64,000 nucleotides of DNA, from assembly GCF_003704095.1 (NCBI RefSeq), contig NW_020847627.1:124001-188000 (forward strand), given 5' to 3'. A program made the position numbers and the translations under genes. The stretch comes from Pocillopora damicornis. Taxonomy: Eukaryota. Every line of letters begins with the position of its first letter. The stretch's first letter is position 1. The notes under the pieces were generated by a model. That model saw only the letters and a program-made list of their open reading frames with translations, had not been told where the DNA came from and searched no databases. Positions 7,420 through 62,908 of the stretch are shown piece after piece.

Positions 7420-8391
7420 TCACCTTAATTGCAGGGATTCAAATAGCGCAGTCCTTTTCCGTTTCAGCGATCCAAGAAGAGTTCTAGTGAATTTTGGTAT
7501 TCTTATGGAGTATACGATTGGATTGGCAAAGCTGTTACTATAATGCAACAGCTTTGTGAAAGCGAAGACTTCATAAGGAATGTGAGATGACTCCCAAGTA
7601 TCACTTAAGAAAACAACGATGTTAAGAATGTAGAAAGGTATCCAGGTTAAAACGAAAACAAGTGTTATAATTAAAAGGGTTGTGACGAGTTGTTTCTCTT
7701 GAGCACTTCGCTTCAGTTGGTCAAGTTCTTCCTTATATCTGCTCTCCCGCTTTGGTTTCTCTCTCTTGTGATAGGAAACATTAGCCCATACAAGCACATA
7801 TGCCACACAAATGACCAAAAGTGATGAGAATATGAAGAAAATAATAAAATAGAAGAAAATTCTGAACTTGAACACTTCGAATCCGTTCATAAAATACAAC
7901 ACAGCTACAAACAAAGACAACATCCATACGACTGCTATGAGCTGGTGGTAGGTTTTTTTGGAGGTAAGACGATGTCTTAGAGGACACATCACTGCATACA
8001 GTCGCTCCAGAGCGATTACTGTCAGAGCAAAGATTGAAGCAAACGCTGTGAAAATGTCAATGGCCTTATACGCAATATATGTCCCTTTCACATTTGTTTT
8101 CCAGTAGGATGTTAACTGATGAATATAAAGTGGAACTGCAAATGTGCCAACCATGAGGTCTGCAATAGCTAACGTTACAAGAAAGTAGCTGGCACGCATG
8201 CGTAGAAGTTTCCTTTTAGTGAAGACTGCGATGGTCAGGCAATTGCCAACGATGATAGCTATTGCCACCAATGCGAGTGCTACACACCACGTGACCTGCT
8301 CAGACATGGGCATGGCGCCATTCATAGTTGGTGTTCCCTGGGTTGAATTGAAGTCGTAGCTGTTAGAGCTTTTATTCATGGTCCTGTTCAT
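7420..8391 (-). CDS. Class A (rhodopsin-like) orphan GPCR 1, 323 aa, D3.32/K7.39 group
   Basis: Seven hydrophobic segments; GN (TM1), LAIADL (TM2), IALERLY (TM3), TWIP (TM6), NSFANPIVY (TM7); N-terminal sequons NRT/NKS/NST; acceptor ttttctttgcag 15 nt upstream of the ATG. Confidence 0.95.
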   Translation of the reverse strand: MNRTMNKSSNSYDFNSTQGTPTMNGAMPMSEQVTWCVALALVAIAIIVGNCLTIAVFTKRKLLRMRASYFLVTLAIADLMVGTFAVPLYIHQLTSYWKTNVKGTYIAYKAIDIFTAFASIFALTVIALERLYAVMCPLRHRLTSKKTYHQLIAVVWMLSLFVAVLYFMNGFEVFKFRIFFYFIIFFIFSSLLVICVAYVLVWANVSYHKREKPKRESRYKEELDQLKRSAQEKQLVTTLLIITLVFVLTWIPFYILNIVVFLSDTWESSHIPYEVFAFTKLLHYSNSFANPIVYSIRIPKFTRTLLGSLKRKRTALFESLQLR

Positions 8392-8560
8392 ACTGAGTGA
8401 TCACACCTGCAAAGAAAACAAACAAAACAAAACAACTAAACAGGCCACGTGGCGAGACTGTTCGCAGAAGGTAAATCAGGATTAATTCAAAGTTGTTACA
8501 TTATGGGTTTTACCTCCCTAAATTTCAGCTTTCGTGTCTCAAACTAATTAATTGGGTAAA

Positions 8561-8662
8561 TTAGTGTTATCAAATGAGTTAAAAGGTAAATTGGCCACCG
8601 TTAAGAGTTTTTAAACTCTTAACGGTGGCCAATTTACCTTTTAACTCATTTGATAACACTAA
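8561..8662. repeat. Perfect 50-bp inverted repeat with 2-nt spacer
   Basis: 8561-8610 is the exact reverse complement of 8613-8662. Confidence 0.95.
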
Positions 8663-8700
8663 AAAAGGCTGACGTTTCGAGCGTTAGCCCTTCGTCAATC

Positions 8701-8734
8701 GCTCTGACGAAGGGTTAACGCTCGAAACGTCAGC
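8701..8734 (+). ncRNA. Minimal type I hammerhead ribozyme motif
   Basis: gct-CTGACGA-a-ggg ttaacg ctc-GAAAC-GTC-agc: intact CUGANGA and GAAA cores, stem II, short palindromic stem III (ACGT), GUC cleavage triplet (cut after 8731) and 3-bp stem I gct/agc. Confidence 0.75.
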
Positions 8735-16028: not shown

Positions 16029-16121
16029 TTACGACCGCAAAGCAATTTATCATCCATCGCGGGCTCAAAGGCTGCAAATTACTCAAAAAAATTCTTATTA
16101 AAAAATGTCAATTTTTTTCGC

Positions 16122-17062: not shown

Positions 17063-17068
17063 AATGTC

Positions 17069-21491: not shown

Positions 21492-22445
21492 ATGTTTCAT
21501 GCAGCGGATTATCATCAAACAGACGCTGAAACAATTGCCTGGATTGTGACGTTAGCTGTTGTGGGTGCCTTAGCAATTGTCATAAACCTCTTGACACTGT
21601 ACACGTTTCTCTCAGCTACAGCGCTCAGATCTCGTAAGCATGTAATGATCATGAACCTCGCTGCGGCTGACGCTTTGTTCGGAGTCACTGGAATACCAGT
21701 TTACCTAGTTTATCTAATTCGACCACAGTTGACTTTGTTTTACGTATGGGTGATGGCGAGCAGGTTCTGCAAAGTAGCTTCACTTTTTACTGTCGGTGTC
21801 ATCGCAGTGGAAAGGATGCATGCCATTGTATGTCCTCTGCGGCACAAAACTCTCTCAAGGCTGGTCTTCAACATCACCATCGCATCAATTTGGATTTGTG
21901 CATCTGCATTAACAGTGAGCGGGTTGGTTGTGCTTTTTCGTAACGTTGACATTATAACCTTTCTTTCACTTGCCTCTGTATTTACTCCCGTTTTGACTAT
22001 TACTGTGGTGTTAGTCATTGGTTCGTGTTACATCTTCATTTGGGTCTCCTACAAGCGTCGAAGATTTCATGCGATCAATCCTTCAACCATTCGGGAACGT
22101 TCGTTGGCTCTCACGCTACTACTGGTCAGTGGTGCCTTCCTAGTCACGTGGTGTCCTCCCTTACTATATCTATCAGTTATTCCGAATTGCATAGACTGCA
22201 TCCAGCCTAATATACAAATCTTAGACTGGTTTGTATTGGTATTTGGAATTCAGTGTCTGGTTAACCCTGCCATTTATTGCTATCGACTGCCTCTGTTTAA
22301 AGTCAGTTTGAAAGCGGTTATCAAAAGAGTGTTTGTGAAGTGTTTCCATCCGTGTTGCAATACGGCACCCAAAAACTCCTCAATTCGTCCCGGTGACCAA
22401 AAGGTTCAGGAACTACAAAAACAGCCAAAGGTTGAGTGTAATTGA
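21492..22445 (+). CDS. Class A orphan GPCR 2, 317 aa (328 aa with upstream exon), K3.36 group
   Basis: 7TM; NLAAADAL, IAVERMHA, TWCPP, ECL3 CIDC, QCLVNPAIYCYRLP; acceptor ggttttag 5 nt before the ATG. Confidence 0.95.
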   Translation: MFHAADYHQTDAETIAWIVTLAVVGALAIVINLLTLYTFLSATALRSRKHVMIMNLAAADALFGVTGIPVYLVYLIRPQLTLFYVWVMASRFCKVASLFTVGVIAVERMHAIVCPLRHKTLSRLVFNITIASIWICASALTVSGLVVLFRNVDIITFLSLASVFTPVLTITVVLVIGSCYIFIWVSYKRRRFHAINPSTIRERSLALTLLLVSGAFLVTWCPPLLYLSVIPNCIDCIQPNIQILDWFVLVFGIQCLVNPAIYCYRLPLFKVSLKAVIKRVFVKCFHPCCNTAPKNSSIRPGDQKVQELQKQPKVECN

Positions 22446-25228: not shown

Positions 25229-26227
25229 ATGGATTCACACGAAGCAGAGGAGAATCTTGATTTGGAATCGTCATCGTGGAAGGTTTGGTGTTCAATTTAT
25301 GGAATATTAAGTTTCTTCATCATCGTCGTCAACACTTTGGCGCTGTTCACTTTCATAAAGACTCCATCGCTCAAGTGTCGAAAACACATCATGGTCATCA
25401 ATCTTGTTGTCGCTGATCTCAGTTATGGAGCCTTGGGATTACCTACATTTATTTACTACGCATTCAAGCCAACATTAATCTCCTTTAACGTCTCAACAGT
25501 TCTTACCTCTTTTTCAAAATTGGTTTGTCTTTTCAGCGTTACTGCGATTGCCATGGATCGAATGTATTCCGTTGTTTGGCCAATACATCATAAAGTTATC
25601 AGCATTAATGTTTACAAATGTGCCGTCATGGCTGTTTGGATTGTTTCTGCTGGAGTGGCCACATTTGAGATGTATAATCGGGGTACATTTAGCAAAAAGC
25701 CCAAAACTTTTATCCCTGTGTTATTAATCGCATTACTGGTAGCAGGTATAGTAACTATTGGTTGCTATGTGTGTATTTGGTTTAAAGCTAGACGCAGAAG
25801 GAAGAGAACAACCACCAAACAGGATAGAAACTTGGTTTTTACTCTGTTACTAGTAACCGGAGTGTTTATGGTCACTTGGGGAATTCCTATCAGTTTTCTG
25901 TCAGTCTCCAGAATGTGCAAAAAATGTTATCAATTTTCTGCTGTGGCTTTTAAATGCATGCAGCTGCTTTTTGCATTACAATCTTTGATCAACCCAATTA
26001 TTTATTGCTTTCGACTGCCAACGTTCAAAATAAGTTTAAAAATGAGATTACAAGAGTTGAAAAGTTCAGGCCGAGGCAATGCGCCAAGAAGATCAAGTAA
26101 GGTGACTGCTAAACCTGAATTGTGGAGGACCTCGGTAATTAAAGAAACGCCGAAACAGCCAGTAAGAACTGAGGGGGAGGCGGCACAACTAACACGCACT
26201 GAGCCTAAGAGAGATCGAAATTTGTAA
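25229..26227 (+). CDS. Class A orphan GPCR 3, 332 aa, K3.36 group
   Basis: 7TM; NLVVADL, IAMDRMYS, TWGIP, ECL3 CKKC, QSLINPIIYCFRLP; acceptor ctttacag 20 nt before the ATG. Confidence 0.95.
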   Translation: MDSHEAEENLDLESSSWKVWCSIYGILSFFIIVVNTLALFTFIKTPSLKCRKHIMVINLVVADLSYGALGLPTFIYYAFKPTLISFNVSTVLTSFSKLVCLFSVTAIAMDRMYSVVWPIHHKVISINVYKCAVMAVWIVSAGVATFEMYNRGTFSKKPKTFIPVLLIALLVAGIVTIGCYVCIWFKARRRRKRTTTKQDRNLVFTLLLVTGVFMVTWGIPISFLSVSRMCKKCYQFSAVAFKCMQLLFALQSLINPIIYCFRLPTFKISLKMRLQELKSSGRGNAPRRSSKVTAKPELWRTSVIKETPKQPVRTEGEAAQLTRTEPKRDRNL

Positions 26228-30413: not shown

Positions 30414-31068
30414 TTATTGCGAATTAAGAGGCGATCTCTATAAAAGCGGTCCAGGGCATTTCGCATCGGAATAAAGTTTCCCTAAAACTTTGCCCAATGA
30501 TCTATCTTTGGTAGCAAGTAAATAAAACCACATTAGTTTCTGGAAATAAGTTAAAATAAAATTTTTTAGAGTTCTCAATAGTCAAAGCTGCAAAAGTCAC
30601 TTTTTTGACCACTTGCGACATCGAAAATTTCAAAAGTAAAAAAAGCCCGGTTCTCGTATCACACCGCATGCAGCAAAAGATCTTTTGTATTCTTAGACTG
30701 TGCGGTATGTAAGGTGTATAAAAAGCATTTCAATTTTGATATTCGTTTATTCAGAGGTTCGTCATGATTTATTTAATGACACACGTTAGACAGCTTTCTG
30801 AAATTGGTCAAAAGTACTCTTTCTTTCTTGGTTGATATTGCTCAAGTCCAGACCAGACCATTGAAAACTCCGCTTGATTTCTTCTAATAAGATGTTTGGC
30901 AGCAGAAAAATATAAAAACATCTTGCACTTATTGATTTTCTTCGCCGTGGTGACTTCAAACTTTTAGCGATTTTGCTAGCGCGACAGCCGATTATGCAAA
31001 TTATTCATTGAGCAAACTCTGACCGTTTTATATAAGTAGCTCAATAAATCTTAGATTTTGGCCATTTC

Positions 31069-31190
31069 AAGTTGAAAATATAGTAGGACAGAGTTTTTAG
31101 ACCAGAGTTTAGAGTTTTTTTTGGACTTTTAAAATGTTTAGGGTGTCAATCAGCGTGGTCTGTTAGCTCTGTCCTACTATATTTCAACTT
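31069..31190. repeat. Foldback / small MITE-like inverted repeat
   Basis: AAGTTGAAAATATAGTAGGACAGAG...CTCTGTCCTACTATATTTCAACTT arms, extending inward to AGACCA/TGGTCT. Confidence 0.75.
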
Positions 31191-31463
31191 AAACAACCCC
31201 TTCAAAACTTACTTCCTGCATCATATCTATTTAACACAGTTATTTAACACTCGATACACGAGTCAGAACAATGTTTATTCGTTTATACGCATATGAGCAA
31301 CTGGCCGATTCGATTACGATTTGCACCGGGAAATGTTCCAGTTTTTTTTCTCTCAGTCTGGAATTTGCATATTGTATGCTAAGGCTTTTGTTCATTTGCA
31401 CTTAGTCCTTTTATTTATTTCTTTCCTACCATGATTCATTCATAGAAATCTGAACAATCATCA

Positions 31464-32423
31464 ATGGATATTCGCCAAGTAAAAGAGATTGTTCAAACGT
31501 TATCAACTGGAACTTTACGGGCTTGGACCGGAGTTTATGCTGTTGAAAGTTTCATCATCGTCTTTGTCAACTCCTTGTCACTGTATACTTTTATCAAGAC
31601 TCCGTCCCTCAAGACACGAAAGCACATGATGGTTGTCAATCTCGCAGTCGCTGATCTCATTTTTGGAGCCCTCGGAATATCGTCTCTTATTTACCTGATA
31701 TTTAAACCAACAATTACTTCCGTTTATGTGTTAAATGCGTCGTACACGTTTCCGAAAGCAGCATGCCTTTTTACTCTGGGTGTGATTGCAGTGGAACGAA
31801 TGCATGCAGTCGTCTGGCCCTTACGTCACAAAGTTATGAGTGGTCGTGTCCACAAAATTGCTCTCGTGGGAATTTGGATACTGTCCGGCATCGTGACTGC
31901 ATTGGAATTGTACAATACGGATGCATTTGGCGAATCTGTTAGATTTGTCTTTTTCCTGCCAATGACAATTTTTGGTGTAATTAGCATAACAATTGTTTGT
32001 TACGTGTGCATTTGGATAAAAGTTAAACGCAGACGACAGAGCGTGCACGGTGCAGCGACCCGAAAGGATAAATCATTGGTGCACACGTTGCTGCTTATTA
32101 CAGGGGTTTTTGTGCTCATGTGGGCACTTCCTATAACTTATTTTTCAGCTTCAAAGATCTGTGACAGCTGTTACAAGATTACATATCCGCTTCTTTTCCA
32201 CCTTTTTAACGCGTTGTTAGCGCTACAATCATTTCTCAACCCAATAATTTATTGCTTCAGGCTGCCTATGTTTAGGATGAGTTTGAAAGCGAGGCTGCGA
32301 GAGATGAAACATTCAGTTTGTTTTCTGCAGAGGCTTTCGTTAGAGTCAAGAAAGAGAGGAACACGAACTGAATTGCCAACCTCAGTGGTAAGAGAAAATC
32401 AAGGCAGCCTGGAAGTCGTTTGA
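31464..32423 (+). CDS. Class A orphan GPCR 4, 319 aa, K3.36 group
   Basis: 7TM; NLAVADL, IAVERMHA, MWALP, ECL3 CDSC, QSFLNPIIYCFRLP; acceptor ttcatag 18 nt before the ATG. Confidence 0.95.
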   Translation: MDIRQVKEIVQTLSTGTLRAWTGVYAVESFIIVFVNSLSLYTFIKTPSLKTRKHMMVVNLAVADLIFGALGISSLIYLIFKPTITSVYVLNASYTFPKAACLFTLGVIAVERMHAVVWPLRHKVMSGRVHKIALVGIWILSGIVTALELYNTDAFGESVRFVFFLPMTIFGVISITIVCYVCIWIKVKRRRQSVHGAATRKDKSLVHTLLLITGVFVLMWALPITYFSASKICDSCYKITYPLLFHLFNALLALQSFLNPIIYCFRLPMFRMSLKARLREMKHSVCFLQRLSLESRKRGTRTELPTSVVRENQGSLEVV

Positions 32424-34017
32424 ACTAGGGTTAGAGCTATCAAGTTTGGAGCTTGGAGCGGGTCCCAATATAAGCGCCGCTGCAAGTGCGTTTCTTCGCT
32501 CACGAGTCATGTGAGGTGGCAAACTGATGCTAGAGCTCTCCTGGCCCTCTCCGTTGGTCGGTACCGATCAACCAATGGACACCTGTTTATAGAGACAATT
32601 GAGCAAGGCGACAATATGAAATATTTTGAGTTCTTGAAAAATATTCGTTCTAAAATTAATTAGGAACCTCACACGTGTCACATGACGACAATTGTATAAA
32701 ATGTTAATCTTGAGAGTTAAGCAGTTCGCCTAAAAATTGGTATCAATAAGAACAATAGTAATCATGATTTTAGAATGATAACGGTAGACGTTATTAAATA
32801 GTTGACTCCAGTGTCTGGGTCTAGCCGAGTAAAGGGGAAAAGACAGAATGTCCACCTTTATTGTACTGACCGGAGAAAAAGATGTGCGTCTTTAGGAAAA
32901 AAAAGCAAAAAGGAGGAAAAAATTAATTTCCCTCTAAACGCAGACACCTAGACACTATACATAAGGGCGTTGCGTTGTACTTAAGTTATTGTGACTATGT
33001 ATGCATAGAACAATTGCGTAAAAAATGCTTCTTCCGAAATGACGCCTAGAATGCGAAAACTCACCTTGGTTAACAATTTTTTTTGTTAGCTACGCCTGTC
33101 AGCACCCTCTGACAGGGCCGTGATTTAAGATTCTGTCCAGTTCGTTTCATGCTACCAACCTCTTTAGCTATGTTGGCTTTGGTTGAACACTGATTTTGCA
33201 CGTAACATCTTTCCTGGCCTTGAAAAGTTTTAATTTCGTTAAAAACGCTAATTATGAAGGTTAAATCCTGACCGTAGGAAAAGCTTGATTTTTAACTCGC
33301 CGATGGCAACCTGTGGACAGCAACTTTTCACTGGACAATAGCTAGGTTTCCTCCTAATTAGTCACAATTAAGCGCTTAATAGCTGCCTCCCAGCCCAGTG
33401 CACAGTGAGTTTCGTTTTCCCCAGGCGAAGCTGAGGAGCACTAGGGCGGTTATTTGCGAGAGGTCTACCCAGACGACGGTTTTACGCAATCAGCGGGCCT
33501 CAGACTTTCTCTATAAGAGAGTTGATTTAATTAAATAAATGTTCTTCTGCTGTCAGCTTTCGGTCTTCTTGACGCTGTGCACAAATATGAATGTTCAGAT
33601 AAAAGATTCAGCTAAATTGTAGATTGTTTGGGACGCGGTTGTGTTAAACAACGGTTAAACTTTTTTTTAATATTCAGACCTGAGGTTCCTCCCCTCTGCC
33701 CTCCTTTTCCCATGGGACCAGTCTCAGGGACTTTTTTTCAATCGCCGCATTCAAATATTTTCTCGAAGCGAGCTGGGAGGCAAATGTTTGCAAAGGTGTC
33801 AATGTTAACGATCTGCAATCATATTCATTTTTACTACCCAATACTTTCGTTCAGCTTTCGTTCGCCGAATTACCCCGCTGTTGCAGCTGCTTTTGTCTTC
33901 ATTCTTGAACTCCAAAGATTCTATTTGATTGTAACTTGAAGCTATGAAATTAAGAATATCAGCACCATGTCTCGGGATTAAGAAAGTTGTTAGACGAGCG
34001 AGGCAATTTGCACCATT

Positions 34018-34210
34018 TTTAATGATCGGCGCTGTTTAATATGGACCTTTGAGGGCTGAAGTAATTATTTTGAAATATGAGAAAAACCGAAGTGGTTTTG
34101 AATACTTTTAGACTTTAATGATCGGCGCTGTTGAATATGGACCTTTGAGGACTGAAGTAATTATTTTGAAACATATGAAAAACCGAAGTGGTTTTGAATA
34201 CTTTCAGACT
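34018..34210. repeat. Tandem duplication, ~96-bp period, 2 copies
   Basis: AATGATCGGCGCTGTT...GAATACTTT.AGACT starts at 34021 and 34117. Confidence 0.93.
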
Positions 34211-34526
34211 AAGACAGATTCACGGGCAAAGTTTGAAAGAAATAGATTGTTCGAAGCGAAATTCACCGTACCGCTTTATTTTAGAGAGACTGCGTCTTAA
34301 ATCCTCTTTATCAAGGAAAAGAGATCCTTGTCAAACAAGCTGATTTCCTCCGGTAATGTAAACGTTCTAACTGGCCTTCTTTCAGTTTATGTCATTTTTC
34401 ACAATGAAGGCATTATGTCTTCGAGAGAAGACATAAAGGGCTACTCTAAAAATAATAACAAAGGGAAAGTCGAAACTCATGCTCAACTCATTGATAGTTC
34501 CTTTAAAACGATTTTATTTAACATTG

Positions 34527-34675
34527 AATAAAGGGGCAAGTTTCTAAAGAAGCTGTGGTGCTGCGTCGGTGGGAGAGTATAGCAGGTAATTTAGTGTTGA
34601 CAAGTGAGATGAAAACGTAAATTGGCCACCGTAAAGGGTAAAAAAGCTGACCTTTCGAGCGTTAGTCCTTCGTCA
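34527..34675 (-). mobile_element. 5'-truncated copy of the Penelope-type repeat with 14-bp TSD
   Basis: Reverse complement of 8705-8853; flanked by TTTATTTAACATTG (34513-34526) and TTTATTAAACATTG (34676-34689). Confidence 0.75.
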
Positions 34676-35226
34676 TTTATTAAACATTGGTTGCCATTTG
34701 TATTTACATATATGAAAACTTCAGGAAGCTAGAGTTCTGAGATGTAAAGAGCAAAATAAAAAAAACTTCTTCTTGAAATTAACTTATCAGAAAATGTTTC
34801 GTTTAATTTTCAGAATTAATACGGTAAGGAACTCATTTTCGCGTACGCGGTTTAGCATATGTAATTAGCAGAAGTTTAGTACAGAATTTCCGATGTAACC
34901 TCTCAGCTGTTTTTGCAAGCTGTCATGCCAAAACAAGATTACCTGTTTTTTTGAAATGAGTTTTTAATCAAAATACAGCGTTGGCATCAGCAAAGCAATA
35001 ACTTGTTTACCTGCCTGAAAAGCTGCTTTATTATCCATAATAATCATCAAGTCGCATTTGCCAGCCAAGGTCTGTGAATTGCTGCTAGATTGACATCATA
35101 TGGTAGAAAAAAGGTGCGAAAACAAAACAAAGCGGATTCACCGCATTTAAGACTAGCACACTGTGAAACTGCATTGAAAGAGTAACGTTGCCAACATCGA
35201 TATCCCTAGCTTTGGCTAGTGAAGAG

Positions 35227-36192
35227 ATGGCAGCAAACTTCACGCACTCTAAATTAGCACTATGGACGACAGCGTTCGTGGTAGAAAGTGTAGCAATCAT
35301 TGTGGGAAATGCTGTCACTATCGCCATATTTTGGGAGAAAAGATCCACTTTGAATAGGACCCGGTTCTTTTTGATAAACCTTTCCGTTGCTGATTTGTTC
35401 ATTGGTGTCGGAGTAATGGAGGATATTGTATGTTTCGCTCTTCGCTACAAAAATGACACCTGCAAGGTGACTCAAAAAACAAATGTAGCTGACGCCATTT
35501 TTGGAATGGCTTCGTTGTCATTCTTAGTCGTAATCGCTTTAGAAAGGCTTTACGCCGTTACCTTTCCTTTACGACACCGCACGATAGCTACGAAAACGTA
35601 CTTCTTCGTTATTGGAACAACCTGGACCGTCTCAGCCATGCTGATTATAATAACGTATCCCATTTTTTCGTACTTTGCAGTTTATATCTTACTTCAACCT
35701 ATCGTAATATCAACGTACACGGCAACATGCTTAATAATCATTACAACGGCATATCTTATAATATTCATTTATTCTAAAAAGAGAGTTCCAAGGGTCGAGT
35801 TAAATCGGGAACAGAACCATAATAAACTGACCAAAACTCTTTTCATAGTTACATTATTGTCGCTGATTACGTGGACTCCGCATGGAATTGCAAATGTGTT
35901 GCGCTTCACAACATATGATGTAGAAGGAGAAGTCTACCTTGCAGGTCAATTTTGTCGATTGGCAAATTCTTATGTAAACCCGATCGTATACTGTCTCCAA
36001 ATGCCGGAATTTCGAGAGAGACTTATCAATCTTTTTGCGTTCAAACGACGCAATAAAGATGCGTCGGGTCTACAGAATCAATTAGCAATTGCGGAGTCGA
36101 TGGATCCGGATTGTCCAGTCTTGCTCTCGTTTACCCGGTTGGATGCAACCCAGGAATTTAAGACCACTATGATTCTGGTATCAAAAATGTAA
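35227..36192 (+). CDS. Class A orphan GPCR 5, 321 aa from first ATG (MAANFTHS...), D3.32/R7.42
   Basis: 7TM; VGN, NLSVADL, IALERLYA, TWTP, NSYVNPIVY. The ORF-track start at 35188 is TTG; the first ATG is 35227 (gagATGg), followed by an NFT sequon. Confidence 0.93.
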   Translation: MAANFTHSKLALWTTAFVVESVAIIVGNAVTIAIFWEKRSTLNRTRFFLINLSVADLFIGVGVMEDIVCFALRYKNDTCKVTQKTNVADAIFGMASLSFLVVIALERLYAVTFPLRHRTIATKTYFFVIGTTWTVSAMLIIITYPIFSYFAVYILLQPIVISTYTATCLIIITTAYLIIFIYSKKRVPRVELNREQNHNKLTKTLFIVTLLSLITWTPHGIANVLRFTTYDVEGEVYLAGQFCRLANSYVNPIVYCLQMPEFRERLINLFAFKRRNKDASGLQNQLAIAESMDPDCPVLLSFTRLDATQEFKTTMILVSKM

Positions 36193-36317
36193 TTTTTCGG
36201 CTAACTCTGCTTAAAATCAGACCTTCGAGGTATGACATATTTTTTTTGTTGACGATGCCTGCAATTTTGTTGGATGATGTCGCAACCCACGTGAACACTT
36301 CTTTCAAGCTCTTATTC

Positions 36318-36710
36318 CAAGTGCGCAAACATCAAGTGTATTCCTCGTTCTAAAAGCCCTATGCGAAGTGCAAAAGCAACAGAAGTATTCCTCTTTCTAA
36401 AAGTACCGCGCCAAGTGCGTAAACATTAATTGTATTCCTCGTTCTAAAAGCCCCGCGCGAAGTGTAAAAGCAACAAGAGTATTCCTATTTCTACAAGTAC
36501 CGCGCCAAGGGCATAAGCATCAAGTGTATTCCTCGTTCTAAAAGCACCGCGTTAAGTGCAAAAACAACAATAGTATTCCTCTTTCCAAAAGTACTGTGCC
36601 AAGTGCATAAACATCAAGTGTATTTCTAGTTTTAAAAGCCCCGCGCGAAGTGCAAAAGCAACAAGAGTATTCCTCTTTCTAAAAGTACCGCGCCAAGTGC
36701 AGAAAACAAT
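36318..36710. repeat. Minisatellite: 47-bp monomers alternating A/B (94-bp higher-order unit), 8 full monomers plus a partial one
   Basis: A = CAAGTGCGCAAACATCAAGTGTATTCCTCGTTCTAAAAGCCC..., B = GAAGTGCAAAAGCAACAAGAGTATTCCTCTTTCTAAAAGTACCGCGC; exact 47-bp spacing from 36318 to 36694. Confidence 0.95.
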
Positions 36711-37748
36711 CTGAACCAGGAATGGTGAATTCGAAGCCCTTAGGGATAGAGGGCCGGATAGGAAAGAAAATTTTTTTTCCTTCCCTCATTGGCGGCATTC
36801 ATAAAGGATTTCACTTTAAATGAAAAATATGTTACCTATAATTTGTTATAAATTGCAACCTCTACGCATATTCAAAGAATATAGAAAGATTAATTGGATG
36901 GGATGTCCAATGGAAAACGCAACTTTCTGAAAGGAAAAGGATGGACATTTTTATTTTATAAAGTATCAACCAATAGTAATGTGAACTCTGTTTTAATTGA
37001 ATACAAGACAAAAGAGGGGGCAAAATCGACGCACGTGTCAGAACATCAAAGGTATCCAGTCACTTCGTAACGGCGGTCCTCTCGTACCCAAATGCAGTCG
37101 ATTCGTGCCCAAACCACTAACCAGTTCTAACTTGTTGTTACACCTCCAAATATACATTAATTCTAAATACCTTACGTGCGAGTGCGTGAACAGATGTTAA
37201 TGATGCCTACAAAAATCAATTAGAGTCAAGCGAGTATTAAAGATACAAAAATAATTATGTTGTGTGTACTTGTAACCGTATTGCTTAGCGCGAAGTAAGT
37301 GTGATATTTTTTTCAGAAAAGTCTATTGTTTATACTTGTGATAACAGCTCGTGTAAGTGAGATATTAATTCTCCTGTTGTTGTCAACAGAAACAATTTCG
37401 TTTCTTCTAATTAAAAATTAATTTGTAGAAACGAGAACTAGCCATTATAAGGGAAGAAAAAGAGGATTAAAAAAATTGTGCTTTTGAAAAAGAGATGCAT
37501 CCACAGGAAATATTTATAGCCAGGTTTCTCCTACTCTTTGTAATACCAAATTGATGGTCAAGATGAAAAAGAATGACGGGAAATTCCCTTGCTTTGAAAC
37601 CTTGCGTCCTTAAGGTCGAAAACTTCGGTGAGTTTTTTTTTAAAATCACAGAGCGTTTTGTTGTTGCTATATAGATGCCGTTCGTTTATCAATTATGATA
37701 GTTCGATCAAATAACATCTCTATCGTTTAAATCTTTACCTGCTTAAAT

Positions 37749-37969
37749 GACTGTGAGTATATGAAAGTCGTATATGTGAATTGCGGATTGTGAAATGAAT
37801 AGGAAAGTGATCTTCCCAATAATGAACACTACTAAAACAGGAGTGAAAATATGGCCTGGAAATAACTCAGGCCTGTACGGGATTTTAACCCATGACCTCT
37901 ATCATACTGGTGCGGTGCTCTACAAACTGAGCTAACAAGCCAACTGTGAACTGGTCATTTTGTTGGTTC
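37749..37969 (-). mobile_element. tRNA-derived SINE
   Basis: Minus strand TAGCTCAGTTTGTAGAGCACCGCACC...GGGTTAAAATCCC (A-box, degenerate B-box), then an AGGCCTGA..TCAGGCC hairpin and tail. Confidence 0.7.
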
Positions 37970-38603: not shown

Positions 38604-39557
38604 TCAACCGAGGGGCTCATTGCTCGCACTTACTTTAATTACCGAGGAATTTTCAGGCAGTTTTGTTCCAGCTACCACTTTTCTGGATCTTATCGATCTT
38701 CTTGGTTTGATATGTAGGAAAGATTTTATTTCTTGCAACCTCGTTTTCAGGCCCATTTTAAACAAAGGCATTCGAAAGCAATAAATTATTGGGTTCACCA
38801 AAGATTGTACCGCAAGTAGGAGCGTTGCACACATGAAATACCAACCAGAAAAGTGGTCACAACTTTTGCACAACAGGAAGATTGGCTTACAGGTCATGGG
38901 AATTCCCCACGTAACCAAGAAAACTCCCGTGACCAGCAATAGAGTTAGGGCCAATGATCTGTCTTGTCTGGCTGCTGTGCCGATTCTGCACTGTCCTCTG
39001 CGTCGAAGAGTTATCCAAATGCGTAAATAACAAGTAGATGTAATTATAACTATCACAAACAGCGCAGCTGGCTGCAAAAAAGGAGAAAACTTGGAAACCT
39101 TATCTCGCCGATAAATAGAAAGAGTGGTGTTGCCCATCGAAAAGATCCAGATTGCCAGAACAGCTACTTTGTAAGCTTTGCTATTCATCAGTTTGTGACG
39201 TATCGGCCAAACCACTGAATACATCCTCTCCACTGCAATCACACTAAGAGTAAACAGACAAGCGGATTTCGTGAACGTGATCATTACACTTGACACAATA
39301 ATAGAGATAGGCGTTGGATTGAATATGGAGAAGATGAGTGATGGTATTCCCAGGAGTCCATAAATAAGATCAGCAACAGCAAGATTGACAACCATCATGT
39401 GTTTCCGATTCCTGAGCAACGGATTCTTAATGAAAGTATGCAGCAACAAGGTGTTAACTAGCACGACAATGAAACTCATTGTAGCGGAAACTGTACCCCA
39501 AAACTTCCAAATAGATGATCCCAATCCAAAAATCTCTGCAGCTCGGTAGTAATCCAT
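38604..39557 (-). CDS. Class A orphan GPCR 6, 317 aa, K3.36 group (inverted paralogue of GPCR3/4)
   Basis: 7TM; RKHMMVVNLAVADL, IAVERMYS, TWGIP, ECL3 CKSC, QSLVNPIIYCFRMP; acceptor cttttgtgacag 15 nt before the ATG. Confidence 0.95.
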   Translation of the reverse strand: MDYYRAAEIFGLGSSIWKFWGTVSATMSFIVVLVNTLLLHTFIKNPLLRNRKHMMVVNLAVADLIYGLLGIPSLIFSIFNPTPISIIVSSVMITFTKSACLFTLSVIAVERMYSVVWPIRHKLMNSKAYKVAVLAIWIFSMGNTTLSIYRRDKVSKFSPFLQPAALFVIVIITSTCYLRIWITLRRRGQCRIGTAARQDRSLALTLLLVTGVFLVTWGIPMTCKPIFLLCKSCDHFSGWYFMCATLLLAVQSLVNPIIYCFRMPLFKMGLKTRLQEIKSFLHIKPRRSIRSRKVVAGTKLPENSSVIKVSASNEPLG

Positions 39558-42166: not shown

Positions 42167-43078
42167 TTAATTTTTTCTGGTGTAGCGATATCTCGGTATT
42201 CCAAGACAGTCATAAGTAAGGATTTTCTTTACAGTTCTATGAAGTGAACTGATGGTATAGAAATAAAATCCGAGCATTAAAATTGATTTCAGATACAAAA
42301 CGATTCTAACACTGTACAGAAACATTATGGAAACAGGGACACAAAAGTTACAAAATTTATAATATGTAAAACCTGTATAAGGTAAGGCCCATAAAACTAC
42401 ATAAACAGCACATGATGCTATCACTGATTTTACAATTTTTTTGTCTTCGTCGCGATCAGTTTCACGCACTTTGCCATACAGCTGAGAAACCATTACCACT
42501 GTGCACGTGAAGATAAGGAAGAGGGCGGTTATAGCGAGTAGACCAACTGCTAAGTAGAAGTAAACGAAGAATGAAACGTAATCCATTAGACATGCAACAT
42601 TAAAGGCCACAGCACCACCAGCAATAAACGTCGAGCCCGCGATGACGAGATAAAAATTGCGCTTTTTAGGATAACCTGCGTACCGAGTCGGGGACCTGAA
42701 TGTTGAACGTAATGCTTGTACTGATAGAGCCACGAGAATGCCGGCTGAGCCAAACCCAGAGGCACAGTCAGATGCTTCATAGATGTAAAAGCTGTAACTT
42801 GGCCAGTTAGTCATGTTGTACAAGAAGGTTGGTATCGATGCCAGTCCCACCACAAGATCAGCGCAGGCGAGGTAGCCCAGGAAGTATCTCTGATGGTATA
42901 GTAGCGATTGATTTGTAATAAAGGCTCGCACCATGAGGTAGTTAACGGTCAAAATGGCGAGACACACAATGGAATAACACACCACTAGGATTATCAGCTG
43001 GTATGTTTCCATGCCTGGATCCTGGTTAAAGGTGCTATTGACAGATCGCAAATTTGGGGTGACTCGTGTGACGTTCAT
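42167..43078 (-). CDS. Atypical class A-like 7TM receptor 7, 303 aa, lacking E/DRY and NPxxY
   Basis: Intact ORF with 7 hydrophobic segments. VN (TM1), LACADLVVG (TM2), D3.32, WALP and ECL3 CNFC are retained; TM3 end is SVQALR and TM7 end is KSILMLGFY. Acceptor cgtttcag 1 nt before the ATG. Confidence 0.88.
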   Translation of the reverse strand: MNVTRVTPNLRSVNSTFNQDPGMETYQLIILVVCYSIVCLAILTVNYLMVRAFITNQSLLYHQRYFLGYLACADLVVGLASIPTFLYNMTNWPSYSFYIYEASDCASGFGSAGILVALSVQALRSTFRSPTRYAGYPKKRNFYLVIAGSTFIAGGAVAFNVACLMDYVSFFVYFYLAVGLLAITALFLIFTCTVVMVSQLYGKVRETDRDEDKKIVKSVIASCAVYVVLWALPYTGFTYYKFCNFCVPVSIMFLYSVRIVLYLKSILMLGFYFYTISSLHRTVKKILTYDCLGIPRYRYTRKN

Positions 43079-49623: not shown

Positions 49624-50634
49624 TTACAGCGCACACTCACAGTTGCCGTTTGCCTCTGTTTCACTAGATCGTAACGTGCTTGCTCTTCGGCGTCGCTCAG
49701 ATAACATCCTCGAAGTAGCTCGGGTCGATGCCCCATATAAAACTTTCTTTCCAAATAAAGCTAGAAGACCTCGCCTGAAGTCAGGCATCTTGAAGGTGTA
49801 GATAATAGGATTGATGAACGAGTTCATATATTGCATCAATTTAGTGAGGAAAACGAGAGTCAGAATGGATAAAGTGCATCCATTTTCACACAACGTTGGA
49901 ATGAAGATGTTGATGCCTTGGAATGGGAACCAAGTCAAGATGAAAATAGCTGACACAAGAAAAAGTGTTGTTGCTAGTTTCTTGTCTTTTTCCAACGATT
50001 TCTTCGTTTTCTCGTGTATCCTCTGGTTAACCTTGAACCAAATGCCGATATAAGCCAAGCAAATCACCACCACGCAAATGAAGAAAGATACGAGCATAAG
50101 GTACAAGAATATGTTGCTTGAGATCATCTTCTCGTTCACGAGCACTTTTACACACACAAGCACGCCCGCCAGAATCCAGATCATGCTTATCAAGATAAAA
50201 TACAGACAACTTGGTGTAGTTCGATGCCAGTTTGGTAGAACCACTGAGTATAAACGTTCCAATGCAATAGTTGTTAGTGCAAAGATTGAAGCAAATCCTG
50301 AAAAAATGTCCAATAATCTATGAAGTACGTTGATCCACGCGCTATCCAATTCTTCACCTCTTGTGTAAAGAACGAGAGTATGTACAAATATCGGTAATGA
50401 TATTGTACCAACCATCATATCTGCAATCGCCAGGCACAGCAAAAAGTAGTTTGTACGTTTCCGTAGCAACTTGCTCCGCGTGAATACGACTATAGCGAGG
50501 GTATTGCTCATCACAATGAGCATATCGACAATACCAAACGCAAAACACCATCCTATCACCTCCGTGTGTGTGAAGAATGCCTGTCTTGCCCGGCTCTGGT
50601 TATTCACATGGCCGTTGGAATCGTTAACCATCAT
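49624..50634 (-). CDS. Class A orphan GPCR 8, 336 aa, D3.32/K7.39 group
   Basis: 7TM; LAIADMMVG, LDIFSGFASIFALTTIALERLYS, TWFP, ECL3 CENGC, NSFINPIIY; sequons NDS/NQS; acceptor ttttctttcattag 12 nt before the ATG. TM3 is near-identical to GPCR1. Confidence 0.95.
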   Translation of the reverse strand: MMVNDSNGHVNNQSRARQAFFTHTEVIGWCFAFGIVDMLIVMSNTLAIVVFTRSKLLRKRTNYFLLCLAIADMMVGTISLPIFVHTLVLYTRGEELDSAWINVLHRLLDIFSGFASIFALTTIALERLYSVVLPNWHRTTPSCLYFILISMIWILAGVLVCVKVLVNEKMISSNIFLYLMLVSFFICVVVICLAYIGIWFKVNQRIHEKTKKSLEKDKKLATTLFLVSAIFILTWFPFQGINIFIPTLCENGCTLSILTLVFLTKLMQYMNSFINPIIYTFKMPDFRRGLLALFGKKVLYGASTRATSRMLSERRRRASTLRSSETEANGNCECAL

Positions 50635-61083: not shown

Positions 61084-61133
61084 GCGGAAGTCAATGATGA
61101 TGACTTCCGTTCAGGTTATCGAAATGTGGGTCA
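61084..61133 (+). mobile_element. Degenerate fragment of a second hammerhead-bearing repeat family
   Basis: GCGGAAGTCA inverted against TGACTTCCG; relic core aTGATGA-t-GAC...ATC-GAAAtgt. Confidence 0.45.
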
Positions 61134-61246
61134 CTGCTTTTCTGGCACTCCCAAATTATGTGTTCCGCTACTTTATTGATTATGAACGAAGCGTTTTACT
61201 AAAGCTTTTTCCAAATGAAAGATAATCAACCGGATTGAATTTCAAT

Positions 61247-61306
61247 TTTTAACTCTTTCAGGTGGCCAATTTACGTTTTCAACTCAGTCGTTAACACCAA
61301 ATTACC
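61247..61306 (+). mobile_element. 60-bp fragment of the Penelope-type repeat with perfect 11-bp TSD
   Basis: Homologous to about 8736-8795; flanked by TGAATTTCAAT at 61236-61246 and 61307-61317. Confidence 0.75.
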
Positions 61307-62005
61307 TGAATTTCAATAGCCTCGATTATACTCCCACAAAGAATAACGTCTCAGTTAAAAACGTTATAACTGATACCGATTGATAAAGGTTTTTTCAAAC
61401 GCACAACGCAATGACAATTCGTAATATAAATTGATTCCTTTGAAAAGAAAAATTATCATTGTGAGATGACGAGCAGCTTTGGTAACAAAAGCACGCAATT
61501 TATATCTTACTGTTTGTTTCAATAAAGTTCAGTAGGAAGCACGAAACGTTCATTTCAGGTTTTCCCAATCCCATAGGGATTGTATAATGCATGAAACAAG
61601 AATTGCAACGTGACTTTCATAAAAAGTTAAAGCTTACTGAATAGAAGTTAAGCTTTGCTTTCGTTTGCTGGGTCTTTCAAAATGTGTTACCTCATCTTTA
61701 GACGAAAAGACTCATCTCATGCCGTATGACTGAGGTGTTTTAAACTGACATTCTTTTTAAACTGTTTTTAAATCAGTTTTTTTCTTTTTAGTGACTCTTT
61801 TGTGCGTGCGGCACTCCACTAAATATTAAATCTTTTTCTCTATTTTCATGCGTCAGGCGTCGACAGGTGTCACCATACCCACTGGTACTTTAATTGTAAG
61901 GAAGCTGTTAATTTCTTCATTGGCACTTCAGATATTGGCCCCAACTAATTATTGCTCCGTTTCCTTTATGTGTAAAGTCAACCACTATCAAATCAATACA
62001 ATCAA

Positions 62006-62908
62006 TCAAACTCGAGTCTCTCTGACCCAGTTTTTACAAAACATGCGCCTCACTACTACTCTGAACTCGGGTATTTTCAGAGAATAAATGGCAGGATTTG
62101 CTAGTGAATTACCATAGTGAAGCAGCTTTGCAGAGAAAACAAGGTCTACAGGTATTCTCTCCAAAGCTGTGCTTGTAAAGTTCGCAATAATGTTCATGGC
62201 ATGAAAAGGAGTCCAACTTAAAACGAAAACAACCGTAACTATGTACAACGCGGTTGCTAAGCGTTTTTCCTGCTTGGAAACACACATATCCATTTTAGCC
62301 TTGTTCCATAGATGAACACGAACGGAAACGGTCACGTAGGCAGCAGAAATGACAAAAACAGACAGAACAGACAAAATTGTTAAATAATAGATGAAAGTTG
62401 CTCTAGGCAGAATGAAAAGAAGATTTCGAGAGCTTAAAATGTAAACAACAGACGCTATTCCTGATGTAACCCATACCATGGTTATAGCCTTGTAATAACC
62501 TGTCTTGGTTTTTTTCCAGCGGTATGTCATTGGGTAAAGTACGGCATAGAGTCTCTCGAGTGCGATACAAGCCAGTGTGAACACAGAAGCAAGACCAGTA
62601 AAGACGTCTACAACCACATAAGCCTCTTGGAAGAGCAAAAGACTTCTGTCGATTGACGAATAACTGAGGGCGTACACAATATAGATGTACATTGGCATAG
62701 CAGAAGAACCCACCATTAGATCAGCGACAGCCAAATTCATCAAAAAGTAGCCGCCGAATTTCCTTGGAAATTTCTTGTTTGAAAAAATTGCAATGGTAAG
62801 GCTGTTGCCAATGGTAATGAGTACTGCTACGATTCCGTATGATATACACCATGCAATGACGCGAAGATGTTTTGTGGGAAGAGAGTTCTCGGTTGTTGAA
62901 TTGTTCAT
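62006..62908 (-). CDS. Class A orphan GPCR 9, 300 aa, D3.32/K7.39 group; C-terminal PDZ ligand ETRV
   Basis: 7TM; IGN, NLAVADL, VDVFTGLASVFTLACIALERLYA, SWTP, KLLHYGNSLANPAIY; sequons NNS/NST; acceptor ttttcctttcag 60 nt before the ATG. Confidence 0.95.
   Translation of the reverse strand: MNNSTTENSLPTKHLRVIAWCISYGIVAVLITIGNSLTIAIFSNKKFPRKFGGYFLMNLAVADLMVGSSAMPMYIYIVYALSYSSIDRSLLLFQEAYVVVDVFTGLASVFTLACIALERLYAVLYPMTYRWKKTKTGYYKAITMVWVTSGIASVVYILSSRNLLFILPRATFIYYLTILSVLSVFVISAAYVTVSVRVHLWNKAKMDMCVSKQEKRLATALYIVTVVFVLSWTPFHAMNIIANFTSTALERIPVDLVFSAKLLHYGNSLANPAIYSLKIPEFRVVVRRMFCKNWVRETRV

What the first reader, a model, noticed from the sequence alone, without database searches (positions are those of the whole stretch)
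7420..62908. Nine-gene orphan GPCR array with olfactory-receptor-like gene architecture beside a tip-link cadherin
Seen: nine intact 300-336 aa class A 7TM ORFs in 55 kb (orientation - + + + + - - - -) with no other recognisable gene between them. Each 7TM body is one exon. Eight have a clear polypyrimidine+AG acceptor 1-60 nt before the ATG; GPCR5's is weaker. Known: an intronless CDS, 5'-UTR introns and tandem clustering is how vertebrate OR/TAAR chemoreceptor loci are built, and anthozoans have large orphan class A expansions. Inference: this is a chemosensory receptor locus, possibly expressed in the same sensory cells as the adjacent CDH23-like gene.
Basis: partly seen in the sequence, partly recalled or inferred. 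Interest (0 to 1): 0.75.

Follow-up and report, generated by a model that had tools for sequence, protein, structure and literature searches.

The report
Conserved orphan GPCR gene array, coral
The nine receptor genes are real and intact, but they are the first half of a larger, evolutionarily old cluster of orphan G-protein-coupled receptor genes of a kind that is common in this stony coral's genome, and nothing yet shows that they are smell or taste receptors.

Summary
All nine ORFs sit exactly where reported. All nine pass Pfam 7tm_1, and no other gene or receptor fragment lies between them. Splice-acceptor-like sites before the ATGs are enriched (7 of 9 against 13% background), and RNA contigs support the one at gene 4.

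"Nine genes" is a window artefact. On the contig the array runs on to at least 19 intact receptor ORFs in about 121 kb, plus two broken copies.

It is a mosaic of old subfamilies (16-50% identity). G1, G2, G5, G7, G8 and G9 have orthologues in other stony corals, and G1 also has one in Nematostella. Members of different subfamilies share one contig in 8 other assemblies. G3/G4/G6 are fast-evolving duplicates.

Single-exon, clustered class A genes are the norm in this genome, and this scan holds 17 other notes that carry the words 'GPCR array'. The gene architecture therefore says nothing about chemosensation. None of the nine matches the olfactory-receptor model. The G1/G8/G9 group keeps an invariant D3.32/K7.39/Y7.43 pocket.

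The neighbouring gene is a giant cadherin with a weak PCDH15-type membrane-adjacent domain hit, lying tail-to-tail with G1. Its CDH23 identity is not established.

Verdict: an ordinary orphan receptor cluster. Chemosensory function and co-expression with the cadherin remain untested.

The parts
7420..8391 (-). G1, 323-aa class A GPCR (subfamily A). Predicted acceptor puts the coding-exon start at 8406.
   Evidence: ORF. PF00001 123.1 bits. Orthologues at 88% in Stylophora, 78% in Oculina, 62% in Montipora and 50% in Nematostella. Acceptor with 13/15 pyrimidines, 15 nt before the ATG.
21492..22445 (+). G2, 317-aa class A GPCR (subfamily B, old lineage). Predicted exon start 21487.
   Evidence: 61.4 bits. 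Orthologue clade of 10 rows, support 99/99. Acceptor 11/15.
25229..26227 (+). G3, 332-aa class A GPCR (subfamily B, fast-evolving triplet). Predicted exon start 25209.
   Evidence: 73.1 bits. Long branch of 0.53 in the tree. Acceptor 11/15.
31464..32423 (+). G4, 319-aa class A GPCR (subfamily B triplet). Coding exon starts at 31446.
   Evidence: 80.3 bits. RNA contigs lie over the CDS in 4 of 4 runs. The X13 contig begins at 31446; the X1 contig ends at 31444 with 98 unlaid letters.
35227..36192 (+). G5, 321-aa class A GPCR from its first ATG (the ORF is listed from a TTG at 35188). Weak acceptor.
   Evidence: 77.7 bits. 62% to Oculina P0112. RNA contigs only at depth about 2.5, which equals the intergenic background.
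38604..39557 (-). G6, 317-aa class A GPCR (subfamily B triplet). Predicted exon start 39572.
   Evidence: 72.3 bits; 11/15.
42167..43078 (-). G7, 303-aa divergent 7TM protein without E/DRY and NPxxY. Predicted exon start 43079.
   Evidence: PF00001 31.8 bits against a cut-off of 30.5. 16 relatives, including orthologues at 79-47%. None of the 16 relatives has a standard E/DRY or NPxxY at these places.
49624..50634 (-). G8, 336-aa class A GPCR (subfamily A). Predicted exon start 50646.
   Evidence: 104.5 bits. 63% to P0066. Acceptor 12/15.
62006..62908 (-). G9, 300-aa class A GPCR (subfamily A). Predicted exon start 62968 (or 62943).
   Evidence: 99.2 bits. 88% to P0082, in an orthologue clade of 15 rows. 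Acceptor 13/15.
2..2266 (+). Last cadherin-repeat exons of a giant cadherin gene that starts upstream of the window.
   Evidence: PF00028 hits for the ORFs at 14-208, 293-508, 823-1038 and 1994-2266. 36 of 112 + strand ORFs over C4262:84001-131400 hit Cadherin.
3259..3444 (+). Exon resembling the PCDH15-type membrane-adjacent domain.
   Evidence: PF23206 at E 1.4e-4, 22.2 bits, below the cut-off of 27. It covers profile positions 27-82 of 115.
3776..4000 (+). Exon with the cadherin's single hydrophobic (transmembrane-like) segment.
   Evidence: The translation shows a run of about 22 hydrophobic residues followed by basic residues. No Pfam hit.

Best explanation
The nine genes are the first half of a tandem array of at least 19 orphan rhodopsin-class (class A) GPCR genes spanning about 121 kb in a pocilloporid stony coral.

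The array was built by old tandem duplications into at least five subfamilies:
- A: G1, G8, G9 and four genes beyond the window.
- B: G2 plus the G3/G4/G6 triplet.
- G5-like.
- G7-like.
- Two further genes beyond the window.

It has stayed linked in stony corals.

Each member is a separate gene. It has a non-coding leader, an intron ending 1-60 nt before the ATG, and one coding exon. Eight of the nine products keep the class A activation residues (N1.50, D2.50, E/D-R at 3.49-3.50, W6.48-x-P, NPxxY), so they most likely signal through heterotrimeric G proteins.

Inferred, not shown: the conserved members detect conserved ligands. For subfamily A this would be one chemotype of small polar or cationic molecule held by the invariant D3.32/K7.39/Y7.43/N6.55 pocket. 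On this reading they are neuromodulator- or metabolite-type receptors rather than a broadly tuned odorant repertoire. Only the fast-evolving G3/G4/G6 triplet shows the dynamics expected of environment-facing receptors.
For: Anatomy.

Extension of the array: tblastn on C4262:84001-368000; 9 of 10 tested extension ORFs pass PF00001; a tenth is intact.

Old subfamilies and orthologues: FastTree of 164 rows; IQ-TREE of 30 rows; G7 orthologues.

Linkage: members of different subfamilies share the same longest-contig length in 8 other assemblies.
- Stylophora 666,655 (P0002, P0044, P0050).
- Oculina 64,437,903 (P0005, P0039, P0052, P0112).
- 1,711,270.
- 440,293 (G1, G7 and G9 orthologues plus P0041).
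- 409,106.
- 147,008.
- 372,515.
- 3,376,472.

Pocket: across 32 subfamily-A sequences at 36-87% identity, D3.32, F6.51, N6.55, K7.39 and Y7.43 are invariant.

Gene structure: acceptor enrichment at 7 of 9 window genes and 6 of 10 extension genes, against 13% background; G4 RNA contigs.

Background: rhodopsin-like GPCRs are the most abundant domain among tandemly amplified coral gene families (34 of 192 orthogroups; PMC10236652, passages). They are expressed in large numbers in coral neurons (PMC8162421, passages).
Against: - No ligand, G-protein coupling or cell type was tested.
- Conserved orthology does not exclude chemosensation. Vertebrate TAARs also keep D3.32 (recalled, not tested).
- Listed variants in G4 gave 8 synonymous against 16 non-synonymous codon changes, a rough pN/pS of about 0.6. 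The G3/G4/G6 branches are 0.53-0.74 against 0.08-0.13 for the sister triplet. Part of the array therefore evolves fast.
- RNA evidence covers only G4 convincingly. G5 is at background level.
- One contig crosses the G4 acceptor unspliced.
Confidence: 0.6

Rival explanations
1. One reading: the array is a chemosensory receptor locus, working like vertebrate OR/TAAR clusters. Its members are expressed in sensory cells, possibly the same hair-bundle cells that use the neighbouring cadherin.
For: - Tandem, single-coding-exon genes with 5'-UTR acceptors.
- Orphan status.
- A fast-evolving triplet and two broken copies in the extension.
- The neighbouring cadherin has a weak PCDH15-type membrane-adjacent-domain hit.
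- The presumptive Nematostella hair-cell metacell expresses several GPCR genes, some of which the authors suggest may be chemosensory (PMC8846589, passages).
- Pfam Srsx 'chemoreceptor' hits over cut-off in 4 of 9.
Against: - The architecture is the genome-wide default for class A genes.
- 0 of 9 hit PF13853.
- No OR or TAAR chain is among the 60 best solved-structure matches of G1.
- Srsx hits also occur in a histamine-H1-like receptor (P0159), so they are not diagnostic.
- Six of nine genes have conserved orthologues.
- Subfamily A has an invariant pocket.
- There are no pseudogenes in the window.
- The cadherin and G1 are tail-to-tail.
Confidence: 0.2
2. The series of same-strand genes (G2-G5 on the + strand; G6 to the thirteenth gene on the - strand) share upstream leader exons or a promoter. 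Alternative splicing to the acceptor before each ATG would then choose which receptor is made.
For: - Acceptors sit directly before most ATGs in same-strand runs.
- The X1 contig over G4 carries 98 letters that lie nowhere in 31001-37000.
Against: - No joint between a shared exon and two different receptor exons was seen.
- Contigs cannot show transcript starts.
- One contig runs unspliced through the G4 acceptor, and low-depth contigs lie at 31127-31332, which fits a local start.
Confidence: 0.07
3. Some of the ORFs, especially G7, are decaying copies that happen to stay open.
For: G7 barely passes PF00001 (31.8 against 30.5 bits) and lacks E/DRY and NPxxY.
Against: G7 has 16 relatives at 100-47% identity. 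They share its odd motifs and a conserved C-terminal DCLG motif. All nine frames are open, and eight keep the class A residues.
Confidence: 0.03

Closest known systems
Tandemly amplified rhodopsin-like GPCR orthogroups of stony corals (Noel et al. 2023, PMC10236652; passages seen)
   Same: Same kind of object: class A GPCR genes multiplied by tandem duplication in coral genomes, function unknown.
   Different: That paper, in the passages seen, treats them as gene-family counts. Here one locus is resolved: at least 19 genes, at least five old subfamilies, linkage kept across corals, and only part of it recently duplicated.
Vertebrate olfactory receptor and TAAR gene clusters
   Same: Class A fold, single coding exon, 5'-UTR intron, tandem clustering. 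Subfamily A keeps D3.32 and Y7.43, as TAARs do (the TAAR features are recalled).
   Different: No PF13853 match. No C3.25 (0 of 32), and L/F/M instead of W at 7.40. Low turnover with conserved orthologues. Pocket invariant across paralogues. No pseudogenes in the window.
Bilaterian aminergic and adenosine receptors (alpha group of class A)
   Same: Best solved-structure matches of G1, G5, G7, G8 and G9: beta-adrenergic, D2, M3, 5-HT1A, A2A. D3.32, W6.48, F6.51 and Y7.43 are present.
   Different: Only E 1e-22 to 1e-6, so no orthology. No TM3-ECL2 cysteine, no P5.50, no W7.40, and no conserved serine at 5.42/5.43 (S at 5.46 in only 7 of 32). K7.39 is invariant beside D3.32.
Nematostella neuropeptide GPCRs deorphanised by Thiel et al. 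2024 (PMC11087051; abstract and passages seen)
   Same: Cnidarian class A receptors that expanded independently of the bilaterian ones. G1 has a Nematostella orthologue (EDO34795.1 / XP_048580971.1).
   Different: It is unknown whether that orthologue was among the 161 tested or the 31 activated receptors. The lists are in supplements, which were closed. Its accessions occur in no searchable paper.
PCDH15/CDH23-type (tip-link, intermicrovillar) cadherins
   Same: Giant multi-EC cadherin, a weak membrane-adjacent-domain hit just before a single hydrophobic segment.
   Different: The domain hit is below Pfam's cut-off. A 361-aa EC exon matches CELSR1 and protocadherins better than CDH23. Orthology to CDH23 is not shown.

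Membership tests
Class A (rhodopsin-like) GPCR, Pfam 7tm_1 | PF00001 match over the curated cut-off | tested here: met
   9 of 9 window ORFs. 9 of 10 tested extension ORFs.
Class A (rhodopsin-like) GPCR, Pfam 7tm_1 | Conserved activation residues N1.50, D2.50, E/D-R 3.49-3.50, W4.50, W6.48-x-P6.50, NPxxY | tested here: met
   Present in 8 of 9 by alignment and invariant in 32 of 32 subfamily-A sequences. G7 lacks E/DRY and NPxxY. Position 3.51 is L or M, not Y.
Class A (rhodopsin-like) GPCR, Pfam 7tm_1 | TM3 (C3.25)-ECL2 disulfide | tested here: not met
   0 of 32 subfamily-A sequences have C at 3.25. This feature is common but not obligatory in class A; it is absent in melanocortin and lipid receptors (recalled).
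Vertebrate-type olfactory receptors (Pfam 7tm_4) | PF13853 match | tested here: not met
   0 of 9 at E<=0.01.
Vertebrate-type olfactory receptors (Pfam 7tm_4) | Expression of one receptor per olfactory sensory cell | not testable with these tools
   No single-cell data were reachable. Supplements were closed.
Trace amine-associated receptors | D3.32 with W7.40 and Y7.43, and the TM7 fingerprint (recalled from memory) | tested here: not met
   D3.32 and Y7.43 are invariant in subfamily A, but 7.40 is L, F or M. No TAAR chain is among G1's 60 best solved-structure matches.
Bilaterian monoamine receptors | Orthology, plus D3.32, serines at 5.42/5.43/5.46 and W7.40 | tested here: not met
   Best E only 2e-22. 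5.42 is F/L/Y/V/I, 5.46 is mostly F, 7.40 is L/F/M.
Chemosensory receptor (functional class) | Activated by environmental compounds; expressed in exposed sensory cells | not testable with these tools
   Bulk RNA contigs show only that G4 is transcribed.
CDH23/PCDH15-type cadherin | Long run of EC repeats, then a membrane-adjacent domain, then a single TM | tested here: inconclusive
   36 of 112 ORFs hit Cadherin. PF23206 scores 22.2 bits, below the cut-off of 27. The hydrophobic segment is in the 3776-4000 exon.
CDH23/PCDH15-type cadherin | Closest relative is CDH23 | tested here: not met
   For the 361-aa exon: the full-length CELSR1 chain scores 403.7 bits over 4 stretches; a 449-aa CELSR1 fragment 198.3; a protocadherin 264.2; PCDH15 184.5; CDH23 fragments at most 121.7. 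Chain lengths differ, so this is only indicative.

The most novel reading that the evidence does not exclude
The locus is a deeply conserved receptor supercluster. At least five class A subfamilies, which split before stony corals radiated, would be held together next to a tip-link-type cadherin because they share regulation in one sensory cell type, perhaps with leader-exon splicing choosing the receptor. That would be a cnidarian counterpart of receptor-choice loci, and the first molecular handle on chemo-mechanosensory hair-bundle cells.
Probability: 0.07. Interest if true: 0.7.

Novelty: new member of a known kind. Interest (0 to 1): 0.25.

Why it matters
Corals have hundreds to thousands of orphan class A receptors and no identified chemoreceptors. 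Larval settlement, feeding and symbiont uptake all depend on chemical cues.

This locus gives a resolved, partly conserved set of candidates. It includes a subfamily with a fixed D3.32/K7.39 pocket, which should share one ligand chemotype, and a fast-evolving triplet.

The main value of this check is negative. Gene architecture and clustering cannot be used to call chemoreceptors in this genome, because nearly all class A genes look like this.

Tried and rejected
1. Pseudogene-rich birth-and-death array. Rejected for the window, with 0 fragments. Two broken copies exist only beyond it. Another array on contig C2381 has stops in 8 of 9 listed copies.

2. OR or TAAR membership. Rejected.

3. Hidden genes between the receptors. 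None found.

6. Whether the Nematostella orthologue has been studied. Its four accessions occur in no searchable paper. The supplements of PMC11087051, PMC8846589 (file 14, GPCRs of the hair-cell metacell) and PMC8162421 were not seen and may hold the answer.

7. Whether the 393 nt that one run replaces at the G4 stop codon is a transposon. It is single-copy in the genome and has no clear terminal repeats. Left unexplained.

8. The big protein-representative search was not used. It gives no taxa, so it could not test the coral restriction of subfamily B.
Full report
**The observation.** All nine pass Pfam 7tm_1. Their scores are 123.1, 61.4, 73.1, 80.3, 77.7, 72.3, 31.8, 104.5 and 99.2 bits against a cut-off of 30.5. 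G5 is listed from a TTG. Its first ATG is at 35227, which gives 321 aa.

tblastn with the nine proteins gives 76 HSPs, none outside the nine ORFs, so the window holds no receptor fragments. One search found 72 stop-to-stop ORFs of 75 aa or more outside the nine. I scanned the 55 that lie between or after the receptors and found only one chance-level Pfam hit, E 0.003. The other 17 lie in the cadherin region and were treated separately. Rfam reports one tRNA-like match at 37869-37941, which ARAGORN does not call.

**Gene structure.** Each ATG is preceded by an in-frame stop 3-63 nt upstream and by no upstream in-frame ATG. I defined an acceptor-like site as an AG with at least 11 of 15 pyrimidines before it and a pyrimidine at -3, within 60 nt of the ATG.
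- It occurs at 7 of 9 genes, against 13% of random window positions.
- At the looser threshold of 10 of 15 it is 9 of 9 against 23%.
- G5 and G7 miss the 11-of-15 threshold. G7's site (10 of 15) ends one base before its ATG.
- The ten intact receptor ORFs beyond the window show the same site at 6 of 10.

RNA evidence comes from one 6-kb stretch (31001-37000) and four runs held as contigs, three of them on record as RNA.
- G4's coding region is covered in 4 of 4 runs.
- In the oligo-dT run X13 the contig depth is 67-117 over the CDS, against 0-17 in the flanks.
- The X13 contig starts exactly at 31446, the first base after the predicted AG 18 nt before the ATG.
- The X1 contig stops at 31444 and carries 98 further letters that do not lie on the stretch.
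- Against this, one random-primed contig (X10, 31298-31613, depth 3.9) runs through the site unspliced.
- Contigs cannot show transcript ends.
- G5 is covered only at depth about 2.5, which equals the intergenic background, so its expression is not shown.

**Extent of the array.** The window is G000:C4262:124001-188000, on a 368,009-base contig of a 234.35-Mb assembly. I fetched 84001-368000.

tblastn and ORF finding show ten more intact receptor ORFs:
- 193661-194632 (-)
- 199189-200178 (-)
- 204352-205341 (-)
- 210207-211130 (-)
- 228006-228917 (+)
- 231294-232319 (-)
- 237120-238253 (-)
- 241334-242242 (-)
- 244274-245284 (-)
- 251925-252800 (-)

Nine of the ten proteins sent to Pfam pass PF00001. 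The tenth sent, at 256192-257268, has no hit and is not counted. The ORF at 237 kb crosses a locus boundary and was not sent, but it is an open 377-aa frame matching G1 at E 9e-32.

Two loci are broken: about 247.1-248.0 kb, and 253.8-254.7 kb, which is split over two frames. No receptor match lies between 257 and 368 kb. None is listed on this contig below 131 kb, though only the best candidates are scored there.

The array therefore has at least 19 intact genes in about 121 kb. "Nine" is a window artefact.

**What the genes are.** Pairwise identities define four groups:
- {G1, G8, G9}: 33-38%.
- {G2, G3, G4, G6}: 33-50%.
- G5 alone: at most 29% to any other.
- G7 alone: at most 22% to any other.

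G1 has 159 relatives in the word-index search. They include Stylophora pistillata (88%), Oculina patagonica (78%), Montipora foliosa (62%) and Nematostella vectensis (50%). Their automatic names contradict each other: substance-P, beta-2 adrenergic, somatostatin-5 and adenosine-A3 "-like".

I built a FastTree of 164 rows: 9 window genes, 11 extension ORFs, the 141 hits of 250 aa or more among P0001-P0145, and 3 outgroups. Left out were three broken fragments, four short hits and the remaining bird NPFF2 hits. The tree puts G1 in a starred clade that includes Nematostella. G9, G8, G5 and G2 each fall in starred clades with other corals' proteins. The extension genes at 204 and 210 kb fall next to Stylophora P0050 (85%) and P0044 (90%).

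G7 has 16 relatives at 100-47% identity. None of them has a standard E/DRY or NPxxY: most carry MPxxY where G7 has MLxxY, and all share a C-terminal DCLG motif. It is therefore a conserved divergent family and not a decaying copy.

An IQ-TREE of 30 rows places G3, G4 and G6 in a 100/100 clade with a triplet from another coral (P0124, P0126, P0127).
- All three members of that triplet sit on one 409,106-base contig.
- That triplet is monophyletic (93/96) with short branches (0.08-0.13).
- G3, G4 and G6 have branches of 0.53-0.74.
- The monophyly of G3/G4/G6 themselves is unresolved (72/61).

In the own genome, subfamily B exists only at this locus. The four members match G3 at 100-39%, and the next match is 32%.

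Listed differences in the G4 contigs give 8 synonymous against 16 non-synonymous codon changes. That is a rough pN/pS of about 0.6, based on 25 listed places with 36 more not shown.

**Linkage elsewhere.** As a proxy I used identical "longest contig" lengths. Members of different subfamilies share a contig in 8 assemblies:

| Contig length | Assembly | Members on it |
|---|---|---|
| 666,655 | Stylophora | G1 orthologue, P0044, P0050 |
| 64,437,903 | Oculina (a whole chromosome, so weak) | G1 and G5 orthologues, P0039, P0052 |
| 1,711,270 | unnamed | G1 and G7 orthologues, P0036, P0054 |
| 440,293 | unnamed | G1, G7 and G9 orthologues, P0041 |
| 409,106 | unnamed | subfamily B triplet, P0046 |
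| 147,008 | unnamed | G1 orthologue and a B member |
| 372,515 | unnamed | G1 orthologue, P0074 |
| 3,376,472 | unnamed | G8 and G7 orthologues |

This supports conserved linkage among the receptor genes. It says nothing about the cadherin.

**Is the architecture diagnostic?** No.
- The PF00001 scan of the own genome had 2576 first-look candidates. All 149 listed matches are free of stops, nearly all span the whole model in one frame, and many sit in clusters (C3577, C406, C1462, C622 and others).
- The G1 search lists further arrays on C3982, C905, C1751, C2045 and others. It also lists one on C2381 where 8 of 9 listed copies carry stops.
- This scan already holds 17 notes with the words "GPCR array" for this genome.
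- In print, rhodopsin-like GPCR is the most abundant domain among coral-amplified, tandemly duplicated orthogroups: 34 of 192 (PMC10236652, passages).
- Rhodopsin-type GPCRs are expressed in large numbers in coral neuronal cell types, including a Pou4 group (PMC8162421, passages).

**Comparison with known receptors.**
- None of the nine hits the olfactory-receptor model PF13853 at E<=0.01.
- Four of nine exceed the cut-off of the nematode Srsx "chemoreceptor" model. That model also marks a histamine-H1-like receptor among the hits (P0159), so it is not evidence of chemosensation.
- The best solved-structure matches are weak and aminergic or adenosine-like for most genes: G1 with beta-2 adrenergic at 2e-22, G8 with D2 at 1e-21, G9 with M3 at 6e-18, G5 with beta-1 at 3e-15, and G7 with M3 at 1e-6.
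- G3's best matches are GPR20 and SSTR2, at about 1e-9.

I aligned 32 subfamily-A sequences at 36-87% identity to G1.
- N1.50, D2.50, D3.32, E3.49, R3.50, W4.50, F6.44, W6.48, P6.50, F6.51, N6.55, K7.39, Y7.43, N7.45 and NPxxY are invariant.
- H7.42 is present in 30 of 32.
- C3.25 is absent in all 32.
- Position 5.50 is S, A or C.
- Position 7.40 is L, F or M.

A fixed pocket across paralogues that predate the anemone-coral split argues for one ligand chemotype. It argues against OR-like tuning diversity. It does not tell an endogenous ligand from an environmental one. The ligand class is my inference.

**The neighbouring gene.** On the + strand, 36 of 112 ORFs of 60 aa or more over C4262:84001-131400 match the cadherin domain. 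Window exons at 14-208, 293-508, 823-1038 and 1994-2266 are cadherin repeats. The exon at 3259-3444 matches the PCDH15-type membrane-adjacent domain at E 1.4e-4, 22.2 bits, below the cut-off of 27. The 3776-4000 exon holds a hydrophobic segment.

A 361-aa exon matches CELSR1 and protocadherins better than CDH23 fragments. "Giant cadherin with a probable membrane-adjacent domain" is therefore supported, and "CDH23 orthologue" is not. The gene runs towards G1, which runs towards it, so the two are tail-to-tail and cannot share a promoter.

Sea-anemone hair bundles do carry a cadherin-23-like protein. The presumptive hair-cell metacell of Nematostella expresses several GPCR genes (PMC8846589, passages). 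The gene list is in a supplement that I could not open.

**Verdict.** The object is an ordinary but well-preserved cluster of orphan class A receptor genes, so it is a new member of a known kind. Chemosensory function and co-expression with the cadherin remain untested, and the argument from gene architecture does not hold in this genome.

The organism is a pocilloporid stony coral, judged by the 88-90% identities to Stylophora. My recollection that a 234-Mb assembly in 4,393 pieces is Pocillopora damicornis comes from no call.

Noticed in passing
window 34533-34673: A short stretch with contig depth of about 10,000-38,000 in all four RNA runs and many loose ends on both sides. This probably marks a highly repeated or highly expressed short element. 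No Rfam family passes threshold there.
   Followed up: partly
window 37869-37941 (-): Rfam tRNA match (41.6 bits, gathering score 29) that ARAGORN does not call. Possibly a tRNA-derived repeat or a degenerate tRNA gene, lying between G5 and G6.
   Followed up: partly
window 32399-32793: In run X13 a contig joins 32399 to 32793 with the letters TAA in between. That ends the G4 reading frame eight codons early. Run X15 reads straight through, like the window. The 393 nt are single-copy in the genome and have no clear terminal repeats.
   Followed up: partly
window 32119-32331: One low-depth contig of run X1 skips 211 nt with GT..AG ends inside the G4 coding region, which is not a multiple of three. 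Likely a rare mis-splice or an assembly artefact.
   Followed up: no
window 42167-43078 (G7) and its 16 relatives: A coral family of 7TM proteins with no standard E/DRY or NPxxY; most members carry MPxxY where G7 itself has MLxxY. All share a C-terminal DCLG motif (DCLGIPRKY in several). Its members share contigs with G1, G8 or G9 orthologues in three other assemblies.
   Followed up: partly
G1, G8, G9 and C4262:204352-205341, 210207-211130: Subfamily A keeps D3.32, N6.55, K7.39 and Y7.43 invariant, with H7.42 in 30 of 32. It lacks C3.25 and P5.50 in all 32 sequences compared. ECL2 in G1 is only about eight residues long.
   Followed up: partly
G000:C4262 about 247.1-248.0 kb and 253.8-254.7 kb: Two broken G5-like receptor copies (a 206-aa frame, and one locus split over two frames) in the part of the array beyond the window.
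   Followed up: partly
G000:C2381:45-191 kb: Another class A array in which 8 of 9 listed copies contain in-frame stops. It is a better candidate for birth-and-death dynamics than the locus studied here.
   Followed up: no
G000:C4262:84001-124000 (+ strand): Besides the cadherin repeats, two ORFs hit the F5/8 type C (discoidin) domain and one hits Laminin_G_3. I did not determine whether they belong to the cadherin gene or to a separate upstream gene.
   Followed up: no
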